DNA of 29,899 nucleotides from Macrostomum lignano (Eukaryota), in the NCBI GenBank assembly GCA_002269645.1, contig NIVC01004236.1, forward strand, positions 1-29,899, in the 5' to 3' direction. Shown here piece by piece: positions 1 through 22,664 of the stretch; within the stretch, counting starts at the first letter, position 1, and the number at the start of each line of letters is the position of its first letter. Position numbers and translations under genes: made by a program. The notes below the pieces were generated by a model. The model was not told where the DNA came from and did no database searches. It worked only from the letters and a program-made list of their open reading frames with translations.

Positions 1-170
1 ATGAGCGATTCTCTTATAACACCATGACCCTATGAGCGATTCCTTTATAACATCATGACCCTATGAGGGATTTCATTATAAAACCATGACACTATGAGCG
101 ATTTCCTAAAAACACGATGACCCTATGAGCGATTTCCTAAAAAACACGATGACCCTATGAGCGATTTCCT
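1..170. repeat. ~30-bp tandem repeat (CCATGACCCTATGAGCGATTTCCTATAA-like), intronic in BRCA2
   Basis: About 5-6 imperfect copies visible from base 1. Confidence 0.85.
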
Positions 171-189
171 AGCAACCAACCCCCCCCAC

Positions 190-585
190 CCGACAAAATC
201 GCACCCGATGCCCGCCGGAAGCAGCGGATCCCACATTCGCCCGAGCACCAGCAGGCCGCAGCCCTCGCGCAGCCAGGACTCGGCGCCCTCCTCCGGGTTC
301 CACACAGTCAGGGTGGCCACGGCGCCTTCGTCCAAGTCGGCGTCCTCGGTGCCGATGACCAGCAGGCGAACCAGCGGCGTCACCTGACGCTGCTGGACGA
401 GCGGCGGCAGCAGCTGCTCCGGAGCCGAGTCAGAACGTCTCGCTGACGCTCCGTCAGCCAGGCCTGCAGTTCGTCCGCGTTCAGGGCGGAGCGCAGGCGG
501 CCTGAAGCTCCTCGCCGGTGCTCAGCTGGGACACTTCATCAGGCTGGTAGAGACGGCCGCGCTGCTGCGGGGGCTTGGAGCCCAG
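190..585 (-). CDS. BRCA2: BRCA2 exon: end of tower/three-helix bundle and start of OB2 (needs 2-3 single-base frame corrections near 493, 420, 241)
   Basis: Acceptor TTTCAG at 588-586. Stitched translation LGSKPPQQRGRLYQPDEVSQLSTGEELQAA..ALNADELQAWLTERQRDVLTRLR..EQLLPPLVQQRQVTPLVRLLVIGTEDADLDEGAVATLTVWNPEEGAESWLREG resembles human RQQVRALQDGAELYEAV..YLEGYFSEEQLRAL..RDVTTVWKLRIV..ILSIWRPSSDLYSLLTEG (recalled). The 3' boundary (GT at 189-188) is uncertain. Confidence 0.8.
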
Positions 586-605
586 CTGAAATTGGGATGC
601 GGTGT

Positions 606-1041
606 TGGGATCTGGGAGGCTGGCGGCCCAGCAACTGAGGATCTGGGAGTCTGGCCCAGCAACTGGGGATCTGGGAGTCTGGCCAAGCAACTGGGGATCT
701 GGGAGGCTGGCGCCCAGCAACTGGGGATCTGTGAGTCTGGCCCAGCAACTGGGGATCTGGGAGTCTGGCCCAGCAACTGGGGATCTGGGAGTCTGGCCCA
801 GCAACTGGGGATCTGGGAGTCTGGTCCAGCAAATGAGGATCTGGGAGGCTGGCGGCCCAGCAACTGAGGATCTGGGAGGCTGGTCCAGCAACTGGGGATC
901 TGGGAGGCTGGCGGCCCAGCAACTGGGGATCTGGGAGTCTGGCCCAGCAACTGGGGATCTGGGAGTCTGGCCCAGCAACTGGGGATCTGGGAGTCTGGTC
1001 CAGCAACTGGGGATCTGGGAGGCTAGCGGCCCAGCAACTGG
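606..1041. repeat. GC-rich minisatellite GGGATCTGGGAG(T/G)CTGG(CGG)CCCAGCAACT, 27-30 bp units, filling a BRCA2 intron
   Basis: About 15 imperfect copies; same family as 22340-22632, 24389-25885 and 27800-28625. Confidence 0.95.
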
Positions 1042-1055
1042 AAGCAGCCACCAAC

Positions 1056-1513
1056 CTGGTCCTCCACAGCTTCCTCCATTCGCCGGCGGGCCTCAGCCTC
1101 GAACTCCCTGGCCCGTCGGTCCTCGGCTCGAGCCCCGCGGAACACCCTGGCGTCGCTGCCAGGGCTGCGCTCCATGAACTGCCGGGGTACCGCCGGCTGA
1201 CGAACAGGTGCAGAGCGCCAGCCTTGCCGCCGTCGGGCCGCAGTGAGCTGAGCGACACCGGCATCGGCGAGGCGTCGGCGAAGCCCAGCCGGACTCTTCG
1301 GTTGGCAACGCAGCGTCGGGTGCTGTTGCCATGGAGACGGAGAGCGGCGCTGGCCGGCGCTTCCAGCGGCTGGCAGGCCTCAGAGCAGCCAATCAGTTCA
1401 GCCTGGCAGGTGAGCAGCCGGGTGCCCGGTTTGATGAGGCCGGCGGAGGCTGCGCGGCACAGCAGGGGATCCAGCTGTGCGCCGATGCAGTACCAGCCGT
1501 CCGTGAGGGTCAC
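1056..1513 (-). CDS. BRCA2: BRCA2 exon: OB1 fold and start of tower (one -1 shift at G4 1184-1187)
   Basis: VTLTDGWYCIGAQLDPLL...AELIGCSEACQPLEAPASAALRLHGNSTRR...LGF..PMPVSLSSLRPDGGKAG..VSRRYP then, after the shift, RQFMERSPGSDARVFRGARAEDRRARE. This matches BRCA2 ELTDGWY..AQLD, LKISANSTRPA, PFPLPLSSLFSDGGNVG, RAYPIQWMEK..IFRNEREE. AG acceptor at 1515-1514, GT donor at 1055-1054. Confidence 0.95.
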
Positions 1514-1639
1514 CTAAATCGGGAAACTAATTAATGCGTCAAATGATCACACGCTGCTTATAAACTACTGACCAACAGTAGCAAGTGGTAAATAGTATAG
1601 GCAGAGAAAAATGCTGGCGAGACAATTGTCAGACGGCCA

Positions 1640-2265
1640 GACACAGACAGGTAGAGGGGAGACACAGACAGGTAGAGGGGAGACACAGACAGGTAGAGGG
1701 GAGACACAGACAGGTAGAGGGGAGACACAGACAGGTAGAGGGGAGACACAGACAGGTAAAGGGGAGACACAGACAGGTAGAGGGGAGACACAGACAGGTA
1801 GAGTGGCGACACAGACAGGTAGAGTGAAGACAGACAGGTAGAGGGGAGACACAGACAGGTAGAGGGGAGACACAGACAGGTAGAGGGGAGACACAGACAG
1901 GTAGAGGGGAGACAAAGACAGGTAGAGGGGAGACACAGACAGGTAAAGGGGAGACACAGACAGGTAGAGGGGAGACACAGACAGGTAGAGTGGCGACACA
2001 GACAGGTAGAGTGAAGACAGACAGGTAGAGGGGAGACACAGGCAGGTAGAGGGGAGACACAGACAGGTAGAGGGGAGACACAGACAGGTAGAGTGGCGAC
2101 ACAGACAGGTAGAGGGGAGACACAGACAGGTAGAGGGAAGACAGACAGGTAGAGGGAAGACACAGACAGCTAGAGGGAAGACACAGACAGGTAGAGGGGA
2201 GACACAGACAGGTAGAGTGGCGACACAGACAGGTAGAGGGGAGACATAAACAGGTAGAGGGGAGG
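1640..2265. repeat. 21-bp minisatellite GACACAGACAGGTAGAGGGGA in BRCA2 intron
   Basis: About 29 near-identical copies; source of the spurious ORFs at 1558-2350. Confidence 0.97.
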
Positions 2266-2357
2266 GGAGGATACACACAGTCTGACAGGGCAATGGCAGC
2301 AAGGATTGAATAGAAGCCGGGAGTTTCCTAATAAAATGCAAAGCCAGCAAAGTGAAC

Positions 2358-2502
2358 CTTGAGCTGCTGCTGCTGCTGTTGCGCTGGCTGCTTTCCAGTT
2401 TCTGTTCTGTCCGAGTTGCTGCTCCATTGCAGGCTGACCACCTGCAGTGCTAGACGCGAGCTGGGCGGAGAGTCGCGCTCGAGAATTCGACGAATGCAGG
2501 GT
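2358..2502 (-). CDS. BRCA2: BRCA2 exon linking helical domain to OB1 (absent from ORF track in this frame)
   Basis: (R)PCIRRILERDSPPSSRLALQVVSLQWSSNSDRTETGKQPAQQQQQQLK resembles human [22 protein letters not shown]. 145 nt with phase-2 start and phase-0 end, fitting both neighbouring exons exactly. Confidence 0.9.
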
Positions 2503-2674
2503 CTGGTTGATGGAGGAATAAGCAGTAATATCTTGGTTCATTTTGTTGAGCCGAAATCGAATTTTTATCTTGTTCGAGCAAGACTCTGCTAATTTGTCCC
2601 TAAGTACGAATTGTGCGCTAATAAAATTTTCAGCTTTCAGACAATTATAAAGCACAATAATAAAACTATAATTG

Positions 2675-2965
2675 ATTACACCTGCCCTAAATGGGCAGAT
2701 GTGCAACCAACAGCTCAGCCTCAGATATTGCGCGGCGCATCTGAAGGCTGCGTACGGCTGTTCAGTCCAAGGACCTGGGGGGGGGGTCGCCACACACAGC
2801 CTCAATTACCCCAGCTAATGCTGGCACCCATTTTACAGCTGGGTGAACTGAAGAAACGCAGAGTTTAGTGTCTTGCTAAAGGACACAAATCGTTCCGGTG
2901 AGATCAGGAATCGAACCCCCGACCTTCAAGTCGTGAGTCCGACGCTCCAACCACTGGCTACAGAG
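2675..2965 (-). mobile_element. tRNA-derived CORE-type SINE, copy 1
   Basis: Minus strand: tRNA-like head (GTAGCCAGTGGTTGG...GGTTCGATTCC) then TGTGTCCTTTAGCAAGACACT...CAGTTCACCCAGCTGTAAAATGGGTG, similar to the MIR/CORE motif. Three further copies in the window. Confidence 0.85.
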
Positions 2966-3720
2966 TGCAAGTAATATACAATAAATATATGCCACAGGAG
3001 ACAAAGTGCAACAGAGGTCAGTACATTGTACGTAGAAGTGTGTACGCGAGAGTGTGTTGCATCACCTTGGCAACAAAACTGAGTCTGTAAGATAGAATAG
3101 ACCCCCTCGTACACACGCAGGAGCATTTTTATTGTTCTACCATTTTGCGTCTTATAAGACAAACTCCTCAGCGCAAAATGGTAGCAGAAGAAACACAGTA
3201 GACAGCCACATCTTTGCACACGCAGTAAATCTCTGCAGAGTAGAATGAAAATATTTGAGAACAGATGCATTCAAAGTACGCAACGCGCACCGCCTTTTAA
3301 CAGCTTTCATGTCTCCAGCGCACAGAGCACAGAGCTATTCGAGTCTAACGGGGGTGTCGAGGGGCATAAGAGACGGACTAACAATAGAGCTCAGAGCTTT
3401 CCAGAGCTACTCAACAAGGAGGGCTGGGCTGCAAGTGCGCTTGAGCAGAAGAGCAAGAGAAAGAGATAAAATTCTTAAATCTTCATGCTTTTTCACCTGC
3501 TAACAAAGATAGAAGTTTAGAGTAAAGACTAAAGCCCAATATCTGAGTAGTTGAAATCTGAGCTTAACAGAAGCTGACAGAAAACCTGCAGCTCACAGCT
3601 GAGGATGCCAGAAGTTCGTCGAATGACCTTGGCCGCTCGGCCGAAAAATCAAGTGGTTGTGAGTTACTAACTGTCTAACTGTTGGATACTTTACTAAAAT
3701 GTGCATTTTAACATTGGTTA

Positions 3721-4855
3721 ATGACATCCAAAATTTCAGTTCGGCGTGGTAGACAACACGCCCAAGCTGCAGTTGGACATGACCGACGAGAGGAGCGTAG
3801 AGAACCTATCCAGGTGTGCCACTTTCTCATGCGAGAGGGCAAGGCGTGCTTGAGAAGCCTATTCGATTCCAAGCATCCAACGGACGAGCTAACGGAACAC
3901 TTGGCCTCGCCGGACATTCACCGGACGCTGAGGCGACTTAAGATCAAAGACATGCTAACCGAAGACGACTGGCAGACGCTCTACCCGAAGGAGAAATCTT
4001 CCGTGTCCGCTGACAACTACGACCTGCGTCTGCTGCTCCTGTTAGTAAAATACACCTGCGATGTGACGAAGCCGCAGCCAAACGGCTGGATGGGAGATCC
4101 GGAACCTCGCGATGACAGCCAGGGCGCAGCGCTGCAACGCCTACTGGGCATTCAACGCGAGCTCGCCTCGCTGCAGACCTTAAAGGCGAGCGCAGCTAAC
4201 AGACTGTTTAGCCGCATTGCCGAGCAGCTCCAGCGACTGGGACACTCGGGTGCAGCAGACTGTATGAACGCATACAAGCAGGACACTAGCATGGACGAGA
4301 CTGAATCGCGCTTCATTCTGGGCGAATTCCTCGTCTGGTACCGCCAAGAGGTCAGCCAGTTGAAGAGAGAAATCGAAAACCAAGAACGAAAGAAGAAGCG
4401 CGAAGAGATTCCTATTCTGCAGAAACGGCTCAAGACGCGCGATTTGGACACGTCGGAAACGAAAAAACGCCAGTCGGTTGTTGGAAAGGCGACGATGGAC
4501 ATGAGCGACAAGTCGCGCTGTCAGAGATGGGCTCATATCAAAACTGGCATGGTATTAGCGGAGCGCCTCATTCTCGACAAGTACTACGAACAGCTGCTCA
4601 ACGATGTAAAAGCGGACACAGTGGTTGAGCATCTGATGAACAAGGAGATTATTACCCAAGACGAGAGCACGGAAATATTTTCTACTCTGCGCAACAACGA
4701 GCAGATGTCGACGTTGATCGACTTTCTAGTGCCAAAATCTGGCAATGTGTTGGATGAGTTCGTTGAATCGCTGAAACCCAAGAACGAACAGGTGTACCAG
4801 CAGATGCACCAGGACTACCAGGCCGCTAAGGCCGACATCCTTGCTAATAAACCAC
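3721..4855 (+). CDS. NLR-like gene exon 1: DZIP3/hRUL138-type HEPN-like domain (~3808-4245), coiled coil, CARD-like death fold (~4552-4809)
   Basis: CLRSLFD..DWQTLYP..DNYDLRLLLLLVKYTC..PNGW..P..DDSQGAALQRL fits the invertebrate DZIP3-like HEPN pattern. LILDKYYEQLLNDVKADTVVEHLMNKEIITQDESTEIFS..QMSTLIDFLVPKSGNVLDEFVESL fits the CARD pattern. In-frame TAA just upstream of the ATG; donor C/GTAAG at 4856. Confidence 0.85.
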
Positions 4856-4932
4856 GTAAGTATTTATAATAATTAGTAAATCCTCTTCTAAGAGTTGATC
4901 ACAGGATTTTTCTGTTTCTTCTGTTTCTTCAG

Positions 4933-5074
4933 AGGGTCTGCCTTACTGTAACAACATTCTTCGAGAGCGGTACTCCACCGCGTACGCCAAATGGAATCCG
5001 ATTCCATGGTACACTAAAGTTGAAACAGACATTGCCGAATTCTACTGCCAACAGCAGCTGCTCAATTTGAATGG
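4933..5074 (+). CDS. NLR-like gene exon 2 (pre-NACHT segment)
   Basis: TTCTTCAG acceptor, GG/GTAAGT donor, phases 1 to 2 consistent with neighbours. QGLPYCNNILRERYSTAYAKWNPIPWYTKVETDIAEFYCQQQLL shows the LxxxY..P(I/L)PW pattern common before invertebrate NACHT domains. Confidence 0.85.
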
Positions 5075-5151
5075 GTAAGTAGCAGGAAAACAGATCAGAT
5101 CATTAAGCCAGACATAATTTTCAACTTTGATTTCTCAATTTAAAATTGCAG

Positions 5152-7690
5152 AAAGTCAGTCAACGCCTTCCAAGTTTTTGATTATAAGGAAGGCGAAAAA
5201 GACCCGCATACAGTAGTCATTGAGGGTGACCCCGGAACAGGGAAGAGTACGCTGGCTAAGTATATGGCCTACAAATGGTCTTTGGACGAAAACGTATTCG
5301 GACGGCCTTTCCAACTGCTAATCTTGCTTGATCTTAAAGTGACAGCGCCCACAGTGAAAGTGATGATGATGGAACAGCTTTTCGGAGGCGACTGCAAGCT
5401 GGCCGAACGCGAAATTTGGGAGGTGATGAACATGCACCAGGCGAGCACACTGCTCATCATAGATGGCTACGAAGACAATCTAAATGATGAGATGAAGAGT
5501 TTGCTATTTGAGAACATCATGCCGGAACTGCACATTCTGGTATTTAGTCAGACTAACTTTACAGTCAGACTGATGCACCGCTACCAGCGAAAGGTAATTC
5601 TGACCGGATTCGCCAAATCCCAGGCAGAGGAGTACGTTCAGAAGTACGTCAAACTAGCTAAGAAGCCGTGGGAACACTTTTCCTCGTTTCTAAACAAGCT
5701 AGTAGTGGCAAAAAAATCAACTGAGCTTCAAAAGCTGCTGGATGCAGCGAAAAAGTCGCAGGAGCCGCAGAGGCGACGCGGGTCGTCAGAATCGGCGACA
5801 TCTGTGACCTCGGCAAAGCCCAGAGACGAGCGACCTTTGGAGAGGGAAAACACGGACAAAGTCAGCACAAAACTAAGCCGCAGCTCTAGCAAGGGTCAAG
5901 GAAACGATCAGCAGCAACAACAGGATTCAAACGGTGAAAATTCAAATCAAAGCAAAATAGCGTCCCTGCGACATTACTCACAGGTGCCTTTGTACTGTTC
6001 GTTCTTCTGCCTGCTGACCGACATGCGCATGAGTATCGATCTGAACTCTCCGACAACAATTGTGGAACAGTTTGTCTCCTGCATCAAGTTGAAGCTGATC
6101 GAACGCGAAAAGGAGAGTCGCTTCGAAGCGAATCGCGCCTACGCAATGCTGTCCGAACGCGCTATGGACACCATAAAGAAAGGCAGCGCAACTTTCATTT
6201 TGGCCAAGGAGGACCACATGATGACTAAGTTCGGCCTGATTCAACTGGCTACAAACCTCACCGCAGAGGATAACCAGCGCTACATGTTTGGCAATCGTCT
6301 TATTCAAGAGTATCTCGCCGCGAAAAATCTAGACACTAGTGGAACAGATGAAGCTAGCCGCTTCTTCCAGAACATGAGTATGACTCCGATCTCCTACAAT
6401 GTTGTTGTGTTCTACTGCAGCATCCGCAAGTCGGACAACGACACGCCGGCCACCCGGGAACTGTTTGCAAAGATACTGCAGTATAACAAACGGCGAGGCA
6501 AAGCGAGTCGCATGAAAATGCCAGCGGCTACGTCGCCAGAAGACAGTCAACTGGTCGAGGGCAAGATCATGGACTACCAGCTCAGTCTGGAATGCGTGGC
6601 GGTCATGGACATGGCCCGCAGAGATCTTGGCAAGAAAATTGTTGAATCGCTGCCAGAGCGATTCACCGTGAAGCACGAGGGCATCATTCCGAGATTGTCG
6701 CTTACAGGCCTGTCCAAGATGATCAAGTTTAACCACACGACCATCCAAGAGGTGGACTTGCGCCTAGATCTGCTAGCCAAAGAGACGCTTGAGGCATACA
6801 AAAGTCTGGCTACCGCAATGAAAACGAACGTTCACATCAAGACGCTCCGCATCTACTGGACAGAGAAGGATCTAATGGCAGACTTCCTTCAAACCGTGTG
6901 CTGTCCGGAGCCAGAGGACCCCGCCAATTCTACAGGCCAGATGGAAATCAGGCGTAAGAAGCCCGATCAGACCGGCTTTCATCTGAAGAATCTTGAGTGC
7001 ATCGACGAGTCAGGAAAGAAGCTGGACCAGTTGTCGCCAAAAATGCTAAACAACATGCGCGAAGCCTGCTCGAACATGACTAAACTAGAAACGTTCGCAT
7101 TTCAAAATTGTCACCACATGTCGCTGGTTGGAAGCATAATAAAAAATTTGCCAACTAAATTTGCGGACAACCTGCGCATTCTAGACTTTTCTGGCTGCCA
7201 GATGAGCATAGTGGCATCGCAGGATCTCAACGGAAAGCTGATGGAGAGCAAGAGTCTAGAAGGCCTGATCTTGGCTAACCTCAAGATTGATGCGATGGCC
7301 TTTAACACTTTCATCGCCGCATTCTCTAGCAATCGGACCATTGTCCTGCTGGATTTGAGCGGAATCCGCCTGGACAATGTCTGCTTCTTCTCTCTATCCG
7401 AAGCGCTGAAAATTAATAACAAGCTTGAGAAGCTATTCTTACGCCAGGTGCCAATGGACACGAGAGCTTGCAAAGAGGTGGCTAGAATTCTAAAGATTAA
7501 TAAGATGCTGAAACTTCTCACGGTCACGCAGGAGGTCGTCAGCGAGGAGGGTCGCCGGGTTCTGGGCGAGGAGAGCCAGACGGAGACGCGCAAGAATCGG
7601 GCGGTCGTGGACGGCATCGGGGTGGAGTATCGGCAGAGACCGACGAACGAGAGGGCCAATACTAAGAGAAACCCGCTGTCAGTCAAGTGA
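5152..7690 (+). CDS. NLR-like gene exon 3: NACHT NTPase, winged helix and LRR region; full spliced protein 1271 aa
   Basis: Walker A VVIEGDPGTGKSTLAKYMAYKW (5225-5251), Walker B LLIIDGYED, ILTGF, P-motif YSQVPLYCSFFC, WHD FGNRLIQEYLAA, LRRs LRILDFSGCQM / LEGLILANLKI / IVLLDLSGIRL / LEKLFLRQVPM. Exon lengths 1135+142+2539=3816 nt, uninterrupted. Confidence 0.93.
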
Positions 7691-9149
7691 GGAAACCATG
7701 GCCGATGATGAAGACGCATCCTAACTATTATTATCAAATAACAGTGAATTTCAATAACTTTTTAAAAGTTGTGAATAGTTTTTGTTTAGCACTGCCCTCC
7801 TTCGTTAATACGGCCCACAAGAACTTTGTAACTGTTTGCACAGAACGAGAAATCCTAGAATTTAAGCGATATCTTACTGAGACAAAGATGATTTTTTCTA
7901 AAGTAAAAACTGTACGTAAAACATACAGTATTGTTTTAAGTTTATTTATTCTCTATAATAACATTAAGCTAAATGATACAATATAATTTTCAATTTTTTA
8001 ACAGACAGCTTTGTAACAGACTAACAGGAAAAGTTCTTGTCAATTTTTCTAGAAAAAATATAAACAAGTGAATAATAGTTTTTACACTTGGTTGGTTTTA
8101 AATGAAAATTTAAGACAGTGGGTACTTTAAACAAGATGATGATGAAGCGGCCCCAGTCGCTAAACACAGAATCCCAGCTCCAGTTCCATATAAGACCGAT
8201 CGTCCTTCTCTCTTGCCGTAGAGGGAGAAGATTAATTTGCCTGTCGATAAGAAGCCGAGCGACGAAGTTTGGGGTTGCTATGGGGGAGGGGGGTTAATGA
8301 ATCGAATGGAGGCAAAGTGTCAGACAGTAGTGAGATAGATAGGACCCATTCAATCGCGGCATCGATAGCGCTCACACTTATACTATAAGAACTATATAGA
8401 TTCTATATTCGAAAGTCTTGAGCGCATTGGCAGTTTGATTAAAATGCCCATAGCTATAGAGGTTGAAGCCACCAAACTCGCGCTGTCCCATCTTATCGTT
8501 GGGAGGGGGAGCCATAAATGGGAAAGAAAGAGAGAGAGAGACCAACAGGAGCTAGATCGGATAGAGAGAGAGCGAGTGAGCAATTATAAGAAACTGGGGA
8601 ATGTGAAGTTCCGAATGAGAATAAGGCGGAAATGAATAGGCCAGAGGCAAATGGTGAGGGGTGATATATAGGGATTCTGAGCAGTATAGACTCAAATAGA
8701 ATAGGAATGATAGAGATAGAAGAAAGTAAAATGCGGAGGCACCAAATTCCAGAGCTTCGACCGGTTCGAAGAGTTGATTGGTTGCAAAGAGGCACTGATT
8801 TATATACGAGCGTGTATATAATAATACATAGAAGGGAGAAGACTGCAGGGGCTTGGGATTGAATTTTGTTCGGTTTGCTTTTCAATGGGAGATAATGACA
8901 GTGCATAAGAATGAGGAGGTGGTTGGGAGAGGGCAAGGAGACTCAGAACTTGGACTGACAACTCTTATTCAAGCCTTACATTTTTGGACAACTATAAAAC
9001 TTGATTGTAGCTTAGTGTCTTTTAACTTCTCTTTTATTACTAGGTCGCATTTATATTGCTCAGAATGCAGTTAATTGTGTTTAAGGAACTAGCAATCTGC
9101 GCTCCTTCTGTTGGTGACGCAACAAAGAAAGGAATAACAGTTTTGAGTA

Positions 9150-9445
9150 AACTATATGTAAGTAACTACATGTAAGTTTTTTATGTGCAACCGACAGCTC
9201 AGCCGCAGCTATTTCGCGGCGCATTTGAAGGTTGCGTACGGCTGTTCAGTCCAAGGACTGGGGGTCGCCACACACACAGCCTCAATTACCCCAGCTAATG
9301 CTGGCACCATTTTACAGCTGGGTGAACTGAAGCAATGCAGAGTTAAGTGTCTTGTTTAAGGACAAATTGTTTCAGTGGGATCGGAAATCGAACCCCTGAC
9401 CTTCAAATTGTGAGTCCGACGCTCTAACCACTAGGCTACAACAGC
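9150..9445 (-). mobile_element. tRNA-derived CORE-type SINE, copy 2 (most complete)
   Basis: A box TAGCCTAGTGG (~9438-9428), B box GGTTCGATTTCC (~9394-9383), CORE-like body, short ACTTACAT/GTAGTT repeat tail near 9150-9180. Confidence 0.87.
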
Positions 9446-9769
9446 CGTAGTACAGTCAAGTCAGTATTGCTAATCTCTTCAGGAAAATGATGTTTAAAGG
9501 AAAGCAGCATCAGTCTTGAGAAACAGCTATCTAGCTGAAGATATGAGATTCCCTATGAGTTTTTTTGGCTCAAAACATCTGAGTAACCACCAAGAGCCAC
9601 AGAATTTCAGCAATTCCCCCCAATGAGCCTTGACATCTCAGCATTTCCCACACGAACCTTGGCATGTCCCAATTACCACACTGTCATTTTAAAATGTTTT
9701 CTCTGTGTTTTTGGCATGATTTTCTACACACTTTAGTTCCTTATCTGAACCTTTCTGAATTTAGGGCCA

Positions 9770-9945
9770 CACTTTAGGGCAATGAGAATCACACTTTAGG
9801 GCAATGGGAATACACCAATCACAGAATTTCAAGTGAGAATCACACTTTATAATCACACTTTAGGGCAATGAGAATCACACTTTAGGGCAATGAGAATCAC
9901 ACTTTAGGGCAATGAGAATCATACTTTAGGGCAATGAGAATTACT
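9770..9945. repeat. Short array of 22-bp ATCACACTTTAGGGCAATGAGA, reverse complement of the 14905-18077 satellite
   Basis: About 6 copies, partly interrupted. Confidence 0.92.
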
Positions 9946-10332
9946 TTATACTTAAAAGTTCAAACAAAATGACTCGAAACAGTCAGAAACTCGCAGACTG
10001 GGATAGAGGAAGGTTCTTGTTTTTTGCGTTTTTATTTGTTTACTCAATCCTAGCACGCCAAGTTCTAGCTGTGGGCCTCCTTGACACGAGGAGAAAGGGG
10101 AAGAAAAGGAAAAAAGGAAGGACGAGGTGCGTCAGTCGAAGGTACACACAGTCGAGCACGGGCGAATAAAATCGAAAGCTGGTGTGATAGGCCTTGAGAC
10201 GCAGCCAACAAATGGCCTTTAATATTTTAGCATTGCGGCAGGAAAATCCGCTGTAATCTGACACCGGCAATACAGTTTACAAACGAGAGCTGGCCAGCCC
10301 ACTAAACCAGCTGTCGGATTTCCTCCGCAAAG

Positions 10333-10716
10333 ATGAGCGACAATGAGGAACGAATCTGCCTCGTACCAAAAGACGACGACGAATGGAAGCAGCAAAAGCC
10401 GACGGTGACACAAGGAGACACGATCGATGCTACCATAGTAGAGGAGGCTTCAACTTCTTCATCGACGGCTGCAGTCACTACGGCACTGTCAGCAACAGCA
10501 TCGGCACCATCGGCAGCCTCAAACAGCAGCAGCAGCAACAACAAGCGAAGGAGAAAGCTAAGAAGAGCCGGTACAGTTATTGGTGGAAGCAAGAGATTTT
10601 CGAGCCATGGTGGCGGCGGGAGCGGCAGCGGCGGAGTGGCTGGAGGCAGACGGGTGCTGGCTAAGAAGGCCAGTCTGGTTGCTATCGCATCGTCCAAGAG
10701 GCACACAAGTAAAAAA
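10333..10716 (+). CDS. Atypical G-alpha gene, predicted exon 1 (128-aa low-complexity/basic N-terminal extension)
   Basis: ORF from ATG 10333 ends at strong donor AAA/GTGAGT (10717) in phase 0, matching the phase-0 acceptor at 11867. The linkage is inferred from phase only. Confidence 0.6.
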
Positions 10717-10754
10717 GTGAGTAGATCGGAGGCCACAAGATGTTGCATCAAGCA

Positions 10755-11020
10755 GAGGGGGGGGGGTTGTAGCCTACTGGTTAGGGGATTCGATTCTTGA
10801 CCCACCCAGAACAACTTGTGTCCTTGAGAAAGACACCTCAACTCTGCATTGCTTCAGTTCACCCAGCAGTAAAATGGGTGACAGCATTACCTGGGGTAAT
10901 TGAGGGCTTGTGTGGCGATGGCAACCCCAGATTTTAGACTCAACAGCCGCAAGCAGCCTTCAGATGCGCCACGCAATAGCCAGTTGTACGAGCTACATCT
11001 GCCTATTAAGGCAGGTGTAG
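10755..11020 (+). mobile_element. tRNA-derived CORE-type SINE, copy 3 (more diverged)
   Basis: TTGTGTCCTTGAGAAAGACAC..CAGTTCACCCAGCAGTAAAATGGGTG..TGGGGTAATTGAGG..CAGCCTTCAGATGCGCC matches the reverse complement of copies 1 and 2. Confidence 0.8.
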
Positions 11021-11866
11021 TAAAAAAGCTGTCAGTGAAGATGCTATGATAGTGGAGATGAGATCTCACTGGAGATCAGATATTAGTAGATAACATGAGA
11101 AAGAAATAGAGTTAAGGTGAAGGTAAAGATTATACTTCCGTGAATATAAGAGCTCAGTGGAGATTCAATATCAATAAAGACGAGATTTCATTAGGGATGA
11201 AGGTTGAGATGTCAGTAGGGATAAGTTCTCAATGTCATTTCATCACTGGTAGGTAGCTGTAGCCGACTGTAACTATAAATAATGATCAAATATGAATACA
11301 AGTCAATAAGATTGCAATCAAACAATTCTTTTTCAAAACTATCAATTGCTCGGCCGTATTAATTCCCCTATAGAACATTGGGGCGCCCAATTATGCTGAA
11401 GAAGAGATAAAGAAATTGACTATGAAAAAAAGGATGGGAAACGCGCATATTTTTATTTGCATATAACAACGCTTGTCCCCTAATTGCGATTGAAATTCAA
11501 TTATCCAGTACTAAATTTTCTATTTTGAGTTATGGCACGCATTATAGCTATATTGGATTAGAAGATAAGCAAATATATATTGGAATAAATTCGGCAAGGG
11601 GTGCTTAGGAAAATGAGTAGTGGTTGGGAGTACCAACTAGTTTTCTCCTCTATTCTCCGATTCCAACAATCTATAGTGCGAAATGCCAAATTCAGTGTGT
11701 TAAGGAAATGATGACGGCTCGAGTTACGAGCCAATTTCTGGAGAGGATTTAAAAAGCGCCAAACAGTCCTTCTGCCGTCTCACTCACAGATACCTGGGTA
11801 CACGCAAGAGACACCCGCTGAGGACTTAGAGATCTCTTATTCAACTCGCATCAAAACTTCTTACAG

Positions 11867-11996
11867 ATATCGGATCATTTTAACAGCATCAACAAGCTGG
11901 CTCAGAAGAGGGCTCTGATGCGTTCGAAGCAAATTGACCAGCTGTTGCTGACTGACCAGGAAGCCAAGCGCAAGGAGATTCACCTGCTGCTGATTG
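11867..11996 (+). CDS. G-alpha exon: alphaN helix and beta1
   Basis: ISDHFNSINKLAQKRALMRSKQIDQLLLTDQEAKRKEIHLLLIG resembles the canonical RSKxIDxxL..(K/R)ExKLLLLG. TTACAG acceptor, G/GTTTGT donor. Confidence 0.85.
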
Positions 11997-12082
11997 GTTT
12001 GTTTTTTTACTTTAGTACAACACGACACACGTTAAAACAGTTTCTTTCTTACCAAATAATTCCAAATATCTCGACGTCTTAA

Positions 12083-12710
12083 ATGTGTCTACCACAGCCT
12101 GAAGTGTGTCTACCACAGCCTGAAGTGTGTCTACCACAGCCTGAAGTGTGTCTACCACAGCCTGAAGTGTGTCTACCACAGCCTGAAGTGTGTCTACCAC
12201 AGCCTGAAGTGTGTCTACCACAGCCTGAAGTGTGTCTACTACCATATCCTGAAGTGTGTCTACCACAGCCTGAAGTGTGTCTACCACAGCCTGAAGTGTG
12301 TCTACCACAGCCTGAAGTGTGTCTACCACAGCCTGAAGTGTGTCTACCACAGCCTGAAGTGTGTCTACCACAGCCTGAAGTGTGTCTACCACAGCCTGAA
12401 GTGTGTCTACCATATCCTGAAGTGTGTCTACCACAGCCTGAAGTGTGTCTACCACAGCCTGAAGTGTGTCTACCACAGCCTGAAGTGTGTCTACCATATC
12501 CTGAAGTGTGTCTACCATATCCTGAAGTGTGCCTACCATATCCTGAAGTGTCTACCACAGCCTGAAGTGTGTCTACCACAGCCTGAAGTGTGTCTACCAC
12601 AGCCTGAAGTGTGTCTACCATATCCTGAAGTGTGTCTACCATATCCTGAAGTGTGCCTGCCTGAAGTGTGAAGTGTGTCTACCACAGCCTAAGTGTGTCA
12701 AGTGTGTCTA
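12083..12710. repeat. 21-bp minisatellite GTGTGTCTACCACAGCCTGAA in G-alpha intron
   Basis: About 28 copies; source of the PQPEVCL and LQAVVDT artefact ORFs. Confidence 0.97.
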
Positions 12711-13026
12711 AAAGTGTTACTCAGTCTAAAGTGCCCTTTTGAGAGTTCGGAACGTGTCTCACGGCATCTGTAGTGCGTCTCTCGACAGGCTAAAATGTGT
12801 ATACAGTCTATAAGTGTGTCTATCAATAAAAGAGTGTCTCACTATTAAGTTTAAGTTTATGCTGAAGTTTAATTTAAGTTTAATTTTATGAAATTAAAAC
12901 GACAGTATTCATTCATATTATCCGTTATATAGCGCTATTCCTTTAGATTTTTTAACTGCCAAGTTTTTTTCAACCAAAACGTATATTAACGTTTAATCCA
13001 GATTTCACTTTTTGACATTAACTTAG

Positions 13027-13211
13027 GCGGCAACGGATGCGGCAAGAGTACGTTAGTGAAACAGTTTCGAATTCACTACGGAGACGCATTCCCGGACGAG
13101 CAACGCAAGGCGCTGATCGGTCAGGTGCTGGAGAATCTAGCAGATGCGGTGCACATTGTGCTGGAGAATATGCGCACTAGGGACATCTGGTTTCACGATC
13201 CCTACATCAAG
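13027..13211 (+). CDS. G-alpha exon: P-loop and helix alphaA
   Basis: GGNGCGKSTLVKQFRIHYGDAFPDEQRKALIGQVLENLADAVHIVLENM resembles GAGESGKSTFIKQMRIIH..F...E....V.QN...AM..M. Phase-1 acceptor, AAG/GTAGGA donor. Confidence 0.92.
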
Positions 13212-13565
13212 GTAGGAAGGTAGCGGTTTTTTATTCTACATCAAAGTTTGATTGCAGCTGTTGTTGGTCAAAGGGACTTTTTCGAAATTCTAGAAATTAT
13301 CTATCAGAGGACTTGGGCCAGAAGGCTTTCGCTCGATTCCAGGCGTAGCTACATCAAATTTGAATCCACATATTGGGATATTTTTGCTCGACCCATGGCA
13401 GACAAAGTCGGGGCTGCAGTGCATCTTTAGTGCGCCCCTCATGTCTCTGTACTTGTGTAGCTTTGGCTTTAGGGAACCGCAAAAATTCAAGGGCTCACTT
13501 TCTCAGTGCCAGGGTTTTGGAGTTGGTTCTCTTGAACAAGCCCCAGGCAAATATTCATACACCAG

Positions 13566-13975
13566 ACCCGAATTCTGTGGCCCCGCATGGAATGCAACTC
13601 ACACGGAGATGTAAGACCATTGTTAATCGCGCACCCAACCAGGACATGGTTGAAGAATTCCAAGCCTACTGTCCGAAATTCAACAGTCAAATATTTCGCC
13701 ACTCCGGCAAACAAGTGGACATTGAGAACAGCATTCACTACGCGCACGTTGATTTTGTGGACGACGATACGCTGGCATCGGCGCCGACTGACACCGACCT
13801 GCCTAGCAGTTGCGGTCACGACAACGCGCACGAACTACTGTTATTCGATGTTAGCTACCGAGAGGCCAGGCGAAACAACTTAGACTTGAACGGACTTGAC
13901 GGACTGGCTTCGGGTGGGGACGGCAACGGAGGCGACACGGCGTCAGCTTCGTTAATAATCTATTATAATACGCAG
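13566..13975 (+). CDS. G-alpha exon within the helical-domain insertion (5' boundary unresolved: 13507 or 13566; a small exon ~13308-13344 probably precedes it)
   Basis: Open frame ..QDMVEEFQAYCPKFNSQIFRHSGKQVDIENSIHYAHVDFVDDD..YNTQ ending at CAG/GTGAGA in phase 0, matching the acceptor at 14388. Confidence 0.55.
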
Positions 13976-14227
13976 GTGAGAAAGACGCGTCTCACCGGAT
14001 GAGTCTATTTGGAGCATCGTATTAAATAGATAAAGAATAAGAAGTCCACGAGGATTATAAAAAACCAGTTATTTTCTTCTTATCATGTTTTCTTCTACAT
14101 GTAAAATGAAGTCATTATACAAGCGCACATTAAGATCTTAGTACATTTTGGTCCTCATAAATGTGAATTAATGTAACTATAAGGTCATTTCAAGCATGTG
14201 AATGCACATTTTTGTCCTTGTTTAGCG

Positions 14228-14355
14228 CGGCCCGGCGCCTCTAAAGGCTGCGTACGGCTGTTCAGTCCAAGGACTGGCACCCATTTTACAGCTGGGTGAA
14301 CTGCAGCAATGCAGAGTAAAGTGTCTTGCTCAAGGACACAAATTTGAACTCAAGG
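14228..14355 (-). mobile_element. CORE-type SINE, copy 4 (truncated, internally deleted)
   Basis: AAGGCTGCGTACGGCTGTTCAGTCCAAGGACTGG is fused directly to CACCCATTTTACAGCTGGGTGAACTG...GTGTCTTGCTCAAGGACACAA. Confidence 0.85.
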
Positions 14356-14387
14356 TCCTTTCTATCCGATATATAAAAACACCGCAG

Positions 14388-14797
14388 GGCCTCGAGGACA
14401 GCCAGTCCGAAGCGGACGACCGAGACCGTGAGCGAGAGACGCACACGGCCAGGACCTACATTAGCAGTCTGGAATTTGGCAAATTCTCCAGACGTCAAAG
14501 ACGCCAACAACTGCAAAACCTGAGCGGAGAGGATGCCGGACTGAACCAGCTGGACGATGGCAGCTCCGACAGCAGCTGCGCCAGGCTGGTTGAGCACCTT
14601 CACCTAGGCGACGCGCACGACACCGACTCCTCGGGAGGTCGGCGCGCCTCGTCAACCCTGGACGGCTTGCCGCCTCACGACGAAATCGTGTTCTGCTTCG
14701 TGCGACACATAAAGAACTGCATTGTGCAGCCGGAGTTCGAATTGTGCCTCGCTGATCACGAGTACTTCAAGCCGGAGATTACCTACGCCGAGATGTA
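14388..14797 (+). CDS. G-alpha exon: end of insertion, helices alphaC-alphaE (not in ORF track)
   Basis: GLEDSQSEADD...PPHDEIVFCFVRHIKNCIVQPEFELCLADHEYFKPEITYAEM. Ends TA/GTGAGT, completing Tyr with the C at 18196; 410 nt = 136 codons + 2. Confidence 0.75.
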
Positions 14798-14904
14798 GTG
14801 AGTTACTTCGTTTGTTTTTAGAGGGTCTGACAGACAGTCTAGCTGTCCTCTTGATTGTTAATCTGTTTTTTTATATTCAATAGTGACTAGTTCAGTAGGG
14901 CAGC

Positions 14905-17900: not shown

Positions 17901-18077
17901 CTCATTGTCATAAAGTGTGATTCTCATTGCCCTAAAGTGTGATTCTCATTGCCCTAAAGGGTGATTCTCATTGCCATAAAATGTAATTCTCATTGTCATA
18001 AAGTGTGATTCTCATTGCCCTAAAGTGTGATTCTCATTGCCCTAAAGTGTGATTCTCATTGCCCTAAAGGGTGATTC
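14905..18077. repeat. 22-bp satellite GATTCTCATTGCCCTAAAGTGT, ~144 copies (3.2 kb) in G-alpha intron
   Basis: Direct reading; highly homogeneous with a few diagnostic variants. Confidence 0.99.
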
Positions 18078-18195
18078 AACATCAGTCTGATTACAGTTTT
18101 CAAGTTAGCGACAATTTTAACTTAAAACACTAAAAACTTACTAAAATGTTTAAGGCTCTGTAAAATAAAGATCACCAATCTAAATAAATCTACAG

Positions 18196-18324
18196 CTTTA
18201 TACAACACGTGGATCGCGTCATTCAAGAGGACTATGTGCCAACGCTGCAAGATATTTTGGCCATTCGCAAGCCGAGCGACGCAGTCAGACAGACCGAATT
18301 TCAAATTGCTGGCACCACTTTTCG
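18196..18324 (+). CDS. G-alpha exon: alphaE-alphaF, switch I
   Basis: YFIQHVDRVIQEDYVPTLQDILAIRKPSDAVRQTEFQIAGTTFR resembles [41 protein letters not shown] donor. Confidence 0.92.
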
Positions 18325-18349
18325 GTGAGCTTAAAGCGGATGCAGAATG

Positions 18350-19130
18350 TTCTGTGTCTACTTTCCTGTCGCTTCTGTGTCCACCTCTTTGTACTCGCTT
18401 TGTCCACCTCCCTGTCGCTGTAGTGTCCATTTACTGGTCGCTGCTGTGTCCACCTCGTTGCATCCGCTGTGTCCACCTTCCTGTCACTGTTGTGTCCACC
18501 TCTTTGCATCCGCTGTGTCCACCTCTCTGTCGCTGTTATGTCCATCTTCCTGTCGCTGTTATGTCCATCTTCCTGTCACTGTTGTGTCCATCTTCCTGTC
18601 ACTGTTGTGTCCATCTTCCTGTCGCTGTGTGTGTCCACCTTTCTGTCGCTGTTATGTCAATCTTCCTGTCGCTGTTATGTCCATCTTCCTGTCACTGTTG
18701 TGTCCATCTTCCTGTCACTGTTGTGTCCATCTTCCTGTCACTGTTGTGTCCATCTTCCTGTCGCTGTGTGTGTCCACCTTTCTGTCGCTGTTATGTCAAT
18801 CTTCCTGTCGCTGTTATGTCCATCTTCCTGTCACTGTTGTGTCCATCTTCCTGTCACTGTTGTGTCCATCTTCCTGTCACTGTTGTGTCCATCTTCCTGT
18901 CACTGTTGTGTTCATCTTCCTGTCGCTGTGTGTTTCTACCTCTCTGTCGCTGTTATGTCCATCTTCCTGTCGCTGTGTGTGTCCAGCTCTCTGTCGCTGT
19001 GTGTGTCCAGCTCTCTGTCGCTGTGTGTGTCCAGCTCTCTGTCGCTGTGTGTGTCCAGCTCTCTGTCGCTGTTGTGTCCATTTCCCGGTCGCTGTTGAGT
19101 CCACCTTTTTGCATCCGCTGTGTCCACCTC
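18350..19130. repeat. CT-rich ~23-bp degenerate minisatellite (CCTGTCACTGTTGTGTCCATCTT-like)
   Basis: Many variant copies; source of Cys/Leu-rich artefact ORFs. Confidence 0.93.
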
Positions 19131-19216
19131 CCAGCCTCCAATGTGTCTGTTTCCCTAAATTCCCTAAATTCAACTCCCTAAAATGTTTTGTGTCCACCTC
19201 CTTGAATCTGAATCAT

Positions 19217-22632: not shown

Positions 22633-22664
22633 CACAGAATCTGTAACCCGCAGTTCACACAAAC

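What the first reader, a model, noticed from the sequence alone, without database searches (positions are those of the whole stretch)
3721..7690. NLR with a HEPN-like plus CARD double effector module (HEPN-CARD-NACHT-LRR)
An intact 1271-aa STAND protein combines a DZIP3-type HEPN-like domain and a CARD ahead of NACHT-LRR. HEPN domains are RNase effectors in RNase L, Ire1 and bacterial defence systems, and CARDs recruit caspases or adaptors. The pairing suggests an inflammasome-like sensor with two outputs. If the host is a flatworm, a lineage where I know of little NLR characterisation, this would be a notable innate-immune gene.
Basis: partly seen in the sequence, partly recalled or inferred. 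Interest (0 to 1): 0.85.

Follow-up and report, generated by a model that had tools for sequence, protein, structure and literature searches.

The report
Flatworm NLR with a dead HEPN domain
This is one slightly damaged copy of a Macrostomum lignano (free-living flatworm) innate-immune-type NLR gene whose HEPN-CARD-NACHT-LRR layout is real, but it belongs to a family shared with molluscs, annelids, brachiopods and nemerteans, and its HEPN domain lacks the residues needed to cut RNA.

Summary
The domain observation holds. Pfam finds HEPN_DZIP3 (E=2.5e-17), CARD (6e-9) and NACHT (5e-15). The C-terminus matches ribonuclease-inhibitor/NLRP leucine-rich repeats (7e-8). An AlphaFold model of the CARD superposes on Apaf-1 CARD (TM 0.88).

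The window is contig NIVC01004236.1 of Macrostomum lignano, so the flatworm guess was right.

Three corrections apply.
1. "Intact 1271 aa" is wrong at the N-terminus. Sister copies encode 1283 aa from ATG 3605. This copy and one sister contig lack one G after 3812, which frameshifts exon 2. GenBank starts this copy at Met49 (1235 aa).
2. The architecture is not flatworm-specific. Colinear HEPN-CARD-NACHT(-LRR) relatives exist in Lingula, Tubulanus, Owenia, Capitella, Lottia, Haliotis and Mizuhopecten. Aplysia's only canonical NLR was already described with these domains. The fusions were listed in 2013.
3. The "RNase output" is not supported. Canonical DZIP3-type HEPNs carry RNxx(x)xH. This protein and all seven relatives have a 5-residue deletion that removes the His.

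Most likely it is a CARD-signalling STAND switch with a non-catalytic HEPN accessory domain. It is a new member of a known kind, of modest interest.

The parts
3605..3658 (+). Exon 1 of the homologue-supported gene model (MPEVRRMTLAARPKNQVV). It holds the authentic start codon used by the 1283-aa sister copies.
   Evidence: Translation of the window equals the N-terminus of P0001/P0009. A GTGAGT donor follows at 3659.
3659..3739 (+). Intron 1 (81 nt, GT..AG).
   Evidence: Indels between copies cluster here (3701, 3732).
3740..4855 (+). Exon 2, encoding the HEPN_DZIP3 domain, a long helix, a basic disordered linker and the CARD.
3812..3813 (+). Frameshift site. The window has CCAGGTG where two sister contigs have CCAGGGTG, so one G is missing. 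The authentic frame then terminates after 55 codons.
   Evidence: Three-way DNA alignment. The same GG allele is present in contig NIVC01004237.1. Re-inserting the G restores 1283 aa.
3829..3831 (+). Internal ATG (Met49 of the full-length protein) used as the start in the GenBank annotation of this copy (1235 aa). A protein starting here loses the first 14 residues of HEPN helix 1.
   Evidence: P0006 sequence and locus L007 coordinates. Helix 1 spans aa 35-63 in the AlphaFold model.
3886..4302 (+). HEPN_DZIP3 (PF18738) match. The predicted structural domain runs from about 3788 to about 4437, including a 47-residue C-terminal helix.
   Evidence: Pfam E=2.5e-17. AlphaFold pLDDT above 90. No PDB structural neighbour was found.
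4150..4179 (+). Position of the HEPN catalytic motif, here IQRELASLQT. The Arg is kept, the Asn is replaced by Glu, and the His-bearing loop is deleted.
   Evidence: Alignment of 127 HEPN_DZIP3 segments and family alignment A1.
4573..4812 (+). CARD (death-fold six-helix bundle).
   Evidence: Pfam E=6.3e-9. AlphaFold pLDDT is about 90. All top 50 Foldseek PDB hits are CARDs, the best being Apaf-1 CARD (TM 0.88, rmsd 1.5 A).
4856..4932 (+). Intron 2 (77 nt, GTAAGT..CAG).
4933..5074 (+). Exon 3 (CARD-NACHT linker).
   Evidence: It is colinear with P0001.
5075..5151 (+). Intron 3 (77 nt, GTAAGT..CAG).
5152..7690 (+). Exon 4: NACHT, helical/winged-helix domains, LRR and stop codon.
5207..5653 (+). 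NACHT NTPase domain. Walker A is GDPGTGKST at 5225-5251 and Walker B is LLIIDGYED at 5450-5476.
   Evidence: Pfam E=4.6e-15. The family profile hits NLRC4, NLRP and NOD2 structures at E of about 1e-43.
5711..5956 (+). Low-complexity Ser/Gln/Lys-rich insertion of about 82 residues, absent from the seven named relatives.
   Evidence: Alignment A1, columns about 700-780.
6284..6322 (+). Winged-helix motif MFGNRLIQEYLAA. It aligns with NLRC4 KFFHKSFQEY, and the NLRC4 His position is Asn here.
   Evidence: Profile A4 against the PDB with alignments shown.
7157..7573 (+). Ribonuclease-inhibitor-type leucine-rich repeats: four to five clear 28-residue repeats, with more degenerate ones upstream.
   Evidence: PDB phmmer hits to RNH1 and NLRP14/5/9/1 LRRs, E=7e-8 to 1e-4. 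LRR_6 hits occur in relatives.

Best explanation
The locus is one of at least six near-identical copies of a single Macrostomum lignano NLR gene. Full length is 1283 aa in 4 exons with short introns of about 80 nt. The gene belongs to a low-copy family present across Spiralia (brachiopod, nemertean, annelids, gastropods, bivalve, flatworm).

The fixed layout is: His-less DZIP3-type HEPN domain, long helix, basic linker, CARD, NACHT with helical/winged-helix domains, then a short RI-type LRR.

By analogy with NLRC4, NOD1 and Apaf-1 it most likely works as a STAND switch (all steps inferred):
- The LRR and winged-helix region keep the NACHT closed.
- A ligand or perturbation allows nucleotide exchange and oligomerisation.
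- Oligomerisation clusters the CARDs.
- The clustered CARDs recruit a CARD partner. In flatworms the known candidates are the single caspase-2-like CARD caspase and APAF-1 (PMC11463336).

The HEPN domain lacks the Rx4-6H catalytic His and the Asn. I therefore predict it is not an RNase. It is more likely a non-catalytic accessory module for dimerisation, regulation or RNA/ligand binding.

The copy in this window carries a 1-nt deletion in exon 2. At best it makes a protein starting at Met49 with a clipped first HEPN helix.

Shown: gene structure, domain content, loss of the motif, family distribution, the frameshift. Inferred: the activation mechanism, the CARD partner, the role of the HEPN domain, an immune function.
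For: Domains: Pfam; LRR; AlphaFold and Foldseek for the CARD. The family profile is colinear with NLRC4 from CARD through HD2 (profile 284-787 = NLRC4 20-512, E=6e-43) and also hits NLRP3/5/14, NOD2 and RNH1.

Family: an exhaustive phmmer search of 1.84 billion representatives gave 1062 hits. Only seven named non-self proteins are colinear over HEPN+CARD+NACHT. Pfam finds HEPN_DZIP3+CARD+NACHT in all seven, and LRR_6 in two (Mizuhopecten and Haliotis). The full-length alignment is colinear over about 1150 columns. In all-against-all phmmer, each member has the other seven as its best full-length hits, interrupted only by partial gene models.

Dead HEPN. The canonical motif is described in PMC9646362.

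No close paralogues: the word-based full-length search found only the one 90% cluster from M. lignano. All seven annotated models fall in that cluster.

Frameshift.

Candidate partners: PMC11463336.
Against: - No functional or expression data were available.
- The HEPN model (pLDDT 94.7) has no significant structural neighbour in the PDB (best E=1.3). The 'HEPN' label therefore rests on the Pfam family match and the 2013 profile-based classification.
- Loss of the canonical motif does not formally exclude another catalytic arrangement.
- NACHT-only neighbour-joining trees did not robustly recover the family. One method gave a 17-tip clade (the named members plus NACHT-only fragments). Another method recovered no such clade in the full-data tree or in any of 100 bootstrap replicates.
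- The family departs from textbook NLRs at the winged-helix His, which is Asn or Cys, and at the sensor-1 Arg (by eye). Nucleotide handling may therefore differ.
- Strong conservation at low copy number is unlike fast-evolving immune NLRs and could point to a non-immune role.
- The GG/GGG difference could still be a recurrent assembly error.
Confidence: 0.7

Rival explanations
1. One reading: a dual-effector sensor in which activation releases both a HEPN RNase activity (as in RNase L or bacterial STAND-HEPN systems) and CARD-mediated caspase or adaptor recruitment.
For: Both domains are present N-terminal to the NACHT. Active-looking HEPN_DZIP3 domains sit directly in the effector position of many bivalve and cnidarian NACHT proteins. 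Bacterial HEPN-STAND fusions are known (PMC3710099). The conserved Arg of the motif is retained in the M. lignano protein.
Against: The His of Rx4-6H is absent through a 5-residue deletion. The Asn is replaced by Glu. The same loss is shared by all seven relatives, several of which also lack the Arg. Loss of these residues across phyla, with the domain otherwise conserved, argues for a long-standing non-catalytic role.
Confidence: 0.08
2. The copy in this window is a defective allele or duplicate (a pseudogene in the making). The function resides in the GGG copies on other contigs.
For: The 1-nt deletion truncates the authentic frame after 55 codons. The same deletion is present in a second, independently assembled contig that differs from the window at 20 other positions over 8 kb, which argues against a random consensus error. 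Other annotated copies are also truncated: P0007 lacks the HEPN domain and P0008 is a 224-aa HEPN fragment. With at least six copies, selection on each is relaxed.
Against: The remaining 3.7 kb of coding sequence is open. It differs from the intact copy by one amino acid and three silent changes. In the 4.1-kb gene span, three of the four indel sites lie in about 300 nt of non-coding sequence. An in-frame Met 6 codons downstream could rescue most of the protein. The assembly is long-read based and indel errors cannot be excluded (my knowledge, not checked).
Confidence: 0.4
3. The family is not primarily a pathogen receptor. It would be a conserved cell-death or housekeeping platform: an NLR-type 'apoptosome' for CARD caspases, with the HEPN-like domain acting as a sensor or dimerisation module.
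For: The family is low-copy and colinear across at least five phyla, unlike lineage-specific immune NLR expansions. The CARD model is closest to Apaf-1 CARD. Molluscs, annelids and brachiopods lack APAF-1 yet keep CARD caspases (PMC11463336), and all have this NLR.
Against: The margin of Apaf-1 CARD over NLRC4 and caspase-1 CARDs is small (TM 0.88 against about 0.8). Flatworms retain APAF-1, so no gap needs filling there. RI-type LRR sensors are typical of immune NLRs. There is no functional evidence either way.
Confidence: 0.2

Closest known systems
Spiralian HEPN_DZIP3-CARD-NACHT-LRR proteins. Examples: Lingula anatina XP_013410021.1 ('NLRC3-like'), Tubulanus polymorphus XP_074650995.1, Owenia fusiformis CAH1778043.1, Capitella teleta ELT89336.1, Lottia gigantea XP_009051454.1, Haliotis XP_071116058.1, Mizuhopecten yessoensis XP_021374729.1 ('NLRC4-like'), and the single canonical NLR of Aplysia (PMC9334734).
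   Same: Same domain order and similar length (1098-1240 aa against 1283). The alignment is colinear end to end at 21-26% identity. They are mutual best hits. They share the 5-residue deletion that removes the HEPN catalytic His. The winged-helix His is replaced in all of them.
   Different: The M. lignano protein is the most divergent member (scores 227-378 bits against 430-970 among the others). It has a unique low-complexity insertion of about 82 residues after the NACHT core. It is present as several near-identical copies. None of these proteins has been studied functionally as far as I could find.
Vertebrate CARD-type NLRs (NLRC4, NOD1/NOD2)
   Same: CARD, then NACHT with HD1, WHD and HD2, then RI-type LRR. 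The family profile aligns colinearly to NLRC4 residues 20-512 (E=6e-43) and hits NOD2 and NLRP structures. Walker A and B motifs are intact.
   Different: There is an extra N-terminal HEPN_DZIP3 domain and long helix. The LRR is much shorter. The WHD His is Asn. No orthology to a particular vertebrate NLR is implied. The NCBI names 'NLRC3-like' and 'NLRC4-like' are automatic.
HEPN_DZIP3-NACHT expansions of bivalves and cnidarians (PMC9646362, PMC8260672), e.g. Montipora XP_068695986.1
   Same: A DZIP3-type HEPN domain N-terminal to NACHT-LRR, from the same Pfam family.
   Different: Those proteins usually keep the RNxx(x)xH motif (194 of 202 pearl-oyster domains). They have HEPN directly before NACHT without a CARD, often in tandem, and are massively expanded (17-83 per cnidarian, more than 50 in pearl oyster). 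Here the HEPN is His-less, a CARD intervenes, and the gene is effectively single.
Apaf-1 / CED-4 apoptosome proteins
   Same: An N-terminal CARD on a STAND NTPase with a C-terminal repeat sensor. The best structural match of the CARD model is Apaf-1 CARD.
   Different: The NTPase is NACHT, not NB-ARC. The repeats are LRR, not WD40. An extra HEPN domain is present. Flatworms have a separate APAF-1.
Human DZIP3/hRUL138 (founder of PF18738)
   Same: Homologous N-terminal helical domain (Pfam E=2.5e-17).
   Different: DZIP3 is a RING E3 ligase with TPR and other modules and has no STAND NTPase (PMC3710099, Table entry). No solved structure was found to compare.

Membership tests
Metazoan NLR (NACHT-LRR) | NACHT NTPase domain with Walker A (GxxxxGKS/T) and Walker B (hhhhDGxDE) | tested here: met
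   PF05729 E=4.6e-15, above the cut-off. GDPGTGKST and LLIIDGYED are present. The profile hits NLRC4, NLRP and NOD2 at about 1e-43.
Metazoan NLR (NACHT-LRR) | Helical domain 1, winged helix and helical domain 2 between the NTPase core and the repeats | tested here: met
   Family profile positions 284-787 align as a single stretch to NLRC4 20-512. The WHD region profile hits NLRC4 337-499 at E=1.7e-11.
Metazoan NLR (NACHT-LRR) | C-terminal ribonuclease-inhibitor-type LRRs | tested here: met
   phmmer hits RNH1 (E=7e-8) and NLRP14/5/9/1 LRRs over aa ~1095-1232. Pfam LRR models did not reach threshold for this protein, but LRR_6 does in two relatives.
Metazoan NLR (NACHT-LRR) | Winged-helix His that contacts the bound ADP (NLRC4 His443; recalled from the literature) | tested here: not met
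   The family motif F-x-N-x-x-x-Q-[DE]-[FY]-L-A-A aligns to NLRC4 KFFHKSFQEY with Asn at the His position, and Cys in the molluscs. This is a mechanistic detail and not a criterion for belonging to the family.
HEPN_DZIP3 (Pfam PF18738) | Significant match to the family profile over most of its length | tested here: met
   E=2.5e-17, 63.4 bits against a cut-off of 27, profile positions 3-140 of 144. Relatives score 88-138 bits.
HEPN superfamily, as an RNase | Rx4-6H catalytic motif (typically RNxxxH), which forms the composite active site in HEPN dimers | tested here: not met
   The sequence is IQRELAS-----LQT where canonical members have YYRNxxYG--H. The His is absent in all 8 family members. 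The canonical motif is described in PMC9646362.
HEPN superfamily, as a fold | Structural similarity to solved HEPN domains (four-helix up-down bundle) | tested here: inconclusive
   The AlphaFold model is confident (pLDDT 94.7, all-helical). Foldseek against the PDB gives no significant match (best E=1.3, prob 0.10). No HEPN structure was recovered and no contrary fold was identified.
CARD (death-fold superfamily) | Sequence match to the CARD profile and a six-helix death fold | tested here: met
   PF00619 E=6.3e-9, above the cut-off. The modelled helices span aa 291-387 with pLDDT of about 90. All top 50 Foldseek hits are CARDs, the best being Apaf-1 CARD (TM 0.88, rmsd 1.5 A).
Inflammasome or apoptosome-type signalling platform | Ligand-induced oligomerisation and CARD-CARD recruitment of a caspase or adaptor | not testable with these tools
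   Only candidate partners are known from the literature: the flatworm caspase-2-like CARD caspase and APAF-1 (PMC11463336).
Spiralian HEPN-CARD-NACHT-LRR family (defined here) | Colinear full-length alignment, mutual best hits, and the shared His-removing deletion in the HEPN domain | tested here: met
   A NACHT-only distance phylogeny was inconclusive.

The most novel reading that the evidence does not exclude
The His-less HEPN-CARD-NACHT-LRR protein is an ancestral, low-copy spiralian STAND platform. Its dead HEPN domain would act as an RNA or ligand sensor, or as a docking site for free active HEPN proteins. Its Apaf-1-like CARD would activate CARD caspases (caspase-2 or caspase-Y). That would supply the 'missing' STAND activator in molluscs, annelids and brachiopods, which lack APAF-1. 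The protein would be retained in a free-living flatworm, while Schistosoma is reported with zero NACHT proteins (PMC9646362).
Probability: 0.12. Interest if true: 0.6.

Novelty: new member of a known kind. Interest (0 to 1): 0.3.

Why it matters
NLRs have hardly been discussed for flatworms. I found no paper that links Macrostomum with NACHT proteins, and Schistosoma mansoni is reported with zero NACHT proteins.

This work shows that a tractable free-living flatworm keeps a bona fide CARD-NLR that belongs to a family shared with five other spiralian groups. M. lignano supports RNAi and transgenesis (my knowledge). That offers an experimental entry into a family so far known only from automatic annotation.

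The more general point is a caution. The presence of a 'HEPN' domain does not mean an RNase effector. In this conserved family the catalytic motif has been lost in every member examined, so its role must be something else.

Neither point overturns current views. The domain fusions were catalogued in 2013 and seen again in Aplysia in 2022.

Tried and rejected
- The word-indexed protein search with the HEPN+CARD fragment found nothing, not even the protein itself.
- The same tool with the family alignment returned only two unrelated NLRs. Both searches were uninformative, and the family was found only by the exhaustive search.
- NACHT-only neighbour-joining trees were inconclusive. A BLOSUM62-distance tree put the eight members in a 17-tip clade whose other tips are NACHT-LRR-only fragments. 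A first bootstrap run timed out and one script failed. With Kimura distances the clade was not recovered in the full-data tree or in any of 100 bootstrap replicates. I therefore rely on full-length colinearity, mutual best hits and the shared deletion.
- Foldseek of the HEPN model against the PDB gave no meaningful hit.
- A single-sequence PDB search with the winged-helix region gave nothing. The profile search was needed.
- Rfam found nothing in the window.
- Zhu et al. 2022 (Gene 843:146807), a survey of lophotrochozoan NLRs that may already list this gene, is not held in the library. I could not check it.
- I could not identify the organism behind contigs ERR14224704 and ERR14224706, which carry a 39-49% identical gene.
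- I considered whether the window holds a tandem NLR array. It does not: the rest of the contig is minisatellites plus one BRCA2-like exon.


Full report
**What is in the sequence**

Two long ORFs on the + strand (3721-4869 and 5264-7690) can be joined through two 77-nt GT-AG introns and a 142-nt exon.

Pfam assigns three domains to this protein, all above the curated cut-offs:
- HEPN_DZIP3: aa 56-194, E=2.5e-17
- CARD: aa 285-364, E=6.3e-9
- NACHT: aa 445-593, E=4.6e-15

No Pfam LRR model fires. However, residues ~1095-1232 match the repeats of ribonuclease inhibitor (E=7e-8) and of NLRP14/5/9/1, and 28-residue RI-type repeats can be read by eye. The architecture is therefore real and far beyond chance.

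**Origin and true gene model**

The protein is 100% identical over 98% of its length to 'hypothetical protein BOX15_Mlig026612g2' of Macrostomum lignano. The window is the complete contig NIVC01004236.1 of assembly GCA_002269645.1.

The full-length form is 1283 aa (P0001; contigs NIVC01003379.1 and NIVC01004146.1; a variant, P0009, lies on a 310-kb contig). It begins MPEVRRMTLAARPKNQVV|FGVVDN.... In the window this corresponds to:
- an ATG at 3605
- exon 1 at 3605-3658
- an 81-nt intron at 3659-3739
- exon 2 from 3740

Its first 31 residues are exon 2 read in the wrong frame. Homology to other phyla continues upstream of the junction only in the P0001 frame.

The two frames merge because the window lacks one G after position 3812 (CCAGGTG against CCAGGGTG). 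In the authentic frame this produces a stop after 55 codons. GenBank annotates this copy from the next in-frame Met (3829) as 1235 aa (P0006). Re-inserting the G yields 1283 aa that differ from P0001 only at V1233I.

The same GG allele occurs on a second contig, NIVC01004237.1. That contig differs from the window at 20 substitutions and 17 indels over 8 kb. The deletion is therefore more likely a real variant than a random consensus error, though I cannot exclude a recurrent artefact.

In the AlphaFold model the first HEPN helix spans aa 35-63. A protein starting at Met49 would lack half of that helix.

**Copy number**

Seven annotated models all fall into one 90%-identity cluster. They are Mlig026612g1-g5 and Mlig016872g1-g2, on six contigs. 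Three are full length and the rest are truncated.

The word-based full-length search found no other M. lignano protein. The next hits are cnidarian NACHT proteins at E=2e-6. The gene is thus effectively single, present as several near-identical copies. This fits what I recall of the partially duplicated M. lignano genome (my knowledge, not tested here). There is no lineage-specific expansion and no N-terminal domain shuffling among paralogues.

**Relatives elsewhere**

I ran an exhaustive phmmer search of 1.84 billion cluster representatives with aa 1-640. It gave 1062 hits at E<=1e-3.

Seven full-length proteins align colinearly from the HEPN domain through the NACHT (167-267 bits). Their sources are listed:
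- Lingula anatina (brachiopod)
- Tubulanus polymorphus (nemertean)
- Owenia fusiformis (annelid)
- Capitella teleta (annelid)
- Lottia gigantea (gastropod)
- Haliotis species (gastropods)
- Mizuhopecten yessoensis (bivalve)

All seven have HEPN_DZIP3+CARD+NACHT in Pfam, and two (Mizuhopecten and Haliotis) also have LRR_6. The eight proteins align end to end, LRR region included, at 21-26% identity to the flatworm protein. In all-against-all phmmer, each has the other seven as its best full-length hits. The only interruptions are partial gene models that start at the CARD or at the NACHT.

The next-best proteins have different layouts:
- Montipora: 2xHEPN-NACHT-LRR
- Saccoglossus: HEPN-NACHT
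- Branchiostoma: CARD-NACHT

NACHT-only distance trees were inconclusive.

Short Logan contigs from runs ERR14224704 and ERR14224706 carry a 39-49% identical HEPN+CARD / NACHT gene. It is probably from another flatworm, but the organism is unknown.

**The HEPN domain is predicted to be catalytically dead**

I aligned 127 DZIP3-type HEPN segments. Canonical members read ...ADIARIKYYRNxxYG--HA.... This is the Rx4-6H motif with Asn after the Arg, and it was reported for 194 of 202 pearl-oyster domains (PMC9646362).

The M. lignano protein reads ...ALQRLLGIQRELAS-----LQT. The Arg is retained, Asn is replaced by Glu, and a 5-residue deletion removes the His. The same deletion and His loss occur in all seven relatives, and the molluscs and Owenia have lost the Arg as well.

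The domain is nevertheless well conserved. Nearly invariant positions include W, P, D..A..R and the PxPxGW motif. It is modelled with very high confidence (pLDDT 94.7). It is a helical bundle followed by a 47-residue helix and a disordered basic linker (aa 252-279) that leads to the CARD.

Foldseek found no significant neighbour for it in the PDB (best E=1.3). The 'HEPN' label thus rests on the Pfam family match and on the profile-based classification of Anantharaman et al. 2013 (PMC3710099).

**CARD and NOD module**

The CARD model superposes on Apaf-1 CARD (TM 0.88 normalised to the target, rmsd 1.5 A over 89 columns). All 50 best PDB matches are CARDs: Apaf-1, NLRC4, caspase-1, NLRP1, RAIDD, ASC, NOD1, CARD9.

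The family profile matches NLRC4 colinearly from its CARD through helical domain 2 (E=6e-43). It also matches NLRP3/5/14, NOD2 and ribonuclease inhibitor.

Walker A and B motifs are intact. Two details depart from textbook NLRs:
- The winged-helix residue aligned to the NLRC4 His in KFFHKSFQEY is Asn in the flatworm, brachiopod, nemertean and annelids, and Cys in the molluscs. I recall that His as the ADP-contacting His443.
- The sensor-1 Arg is not conserved (by eye).

The flatworm protein alone has a Ser/Gln/Lys-rich insertion of about 82 residues after the NTPase core.

**Most likely mechanism (inferred)**

The protein is probably a STAND switch of the NLRC4/NOD1/Apaf-1 type, working as follows:
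1. The LRR and WHD hold the NACHT closed.
2. A signal permits nucleotide exchange and oligomerisation.
3. The clustered CARDs nucleate a CARD partner.

For flatworms the literature lists one CARD caspase (caspase-2-like) and APAF-1, and reports no CRADD or FADD (PMC11463336). These are the obvious candidates.

The HEPN domain cannot be counted as a second enzymatic output. Its conservation without the catalytic residues suggests a structural, regulatory or binding role. Options are dimerisation, masking of the CARD, RNA or ligand binding, or docking of free HEPN proteins. Which of these applies is open.

**Comparison with what is known**

- HEPN_DZIP3-NACHT proteins are the commonest non-LRR NACHT combination in many cnidarians, at 17-83 per anthozoan. 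They exceed 50 in the pearl oyster.
[quoted passage not shown] That is this architecture.
- I found no paper that mentions NACHT or NLR genes in Macrostomum.
- The pearl-oyster paper lists Schistosoma mansoni with zero NACHT proteins.
- A lophotrochozoan NLR survey (Zhu et al. 2022, Gene) could not be read.

**Verdict**

The 'double effector' interpretation fails on the catalytic motif. The architecture is neither unique to nor first seen in this lineage.

What is modestly new is threefold. The protein belongs to a conserved, low-copy spiralian family. That family has a uniformly His-less HEPN domain. A free-living flatworm retains it.

I rate it a new member of a known kind, interest about 0.3.

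Noticed in passing
window 1-170, 607-1041, 1639-2264, 12084-12699, 14905-18077, 18401-19107, 19215-19477, 19962-20475, 20939-21810, 22385-22633, 24382-25887, 26723-27186, 27801-28625, 29175-29790: About a third of the contig consists of at least 13 different minisatellite arrays with 12-31-bp units. The largest is a 22-bp unit repeated 144 times (95% matches) at 14905-18077. Four arrays (607-1041, 22385-22633, 24382-25887, 27801-28625) share the core GGATCTG(G/A)G...GGCCCAGCAACTG. Many of the long 'ORFs' in the mechanical list lie inside these arrays.
   Followed up: partly
window 22813-24225, minus strand: A 470-codon open frame contains four BRCA2 (BRC) repeats (Pfam PF00634, E=1.2e-31). It is presumably an exon of a BRCA2-like gene lying tail-to-tail about 15 kb from the NLR gene.
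   Followed up: partly
window 1-12233 against L001 (NIVC01003379.1) 6388-18712; window 1681-9751 against L006 (NIVC01004237.1): The contig has collinear sister contigs at 98.6% (45 gap openings in 12.3 kb) and 99.5% identity. Within the gene span, three of the four indel sites fall in the roughly 300 nt of intron/UTR. This points to real allelic or homeologous copies and not assembly noise.
   Followed up: partly
window 6284-6322, and alignment A4: The winged-helix motif of the whole spiralian family has Asn (Cys in molluscs) where NLRC4 has the His of KFFHKSFQEY. The sensor-1 Arg is also not conserved, and the Haliotis member has GQT instead of GKT in Walker A. Nucleotide handling in this family may be atypical.
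   Followed up: partly
window 5711-5956: A flatworm-specific low-complexity insertion of about 82 residues (Ser/Gln/Lys-rich, including a QQQQQ run) lies between the NTPase core and helical domain 1. It is absent from all seven relatives.
   Followed up: no
L003 799-1731; L004 488-1510 and 1825-2403 (Logan assemblies of runs ERR14224704 and ERR14224706): Short contigs from an unidentified sample encode a HEPN+CARD exon and a NACHT exon that are 39-49% identical to the M. lignano protein. This is the closest relative found outside M. lignano and is probably another flatworm.
   Followed up: partly
window 7111-7737 minus strand; 4152-4536 minus strand: Long antisense ORFs (208, 119 and 118 codons) overlap the NLR coding sequence. 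The 208-codon one had no Pfam hit; the two shorter ones were not scanned. I take them all as by-products of the coding strand's composition.
   Followed up: partly
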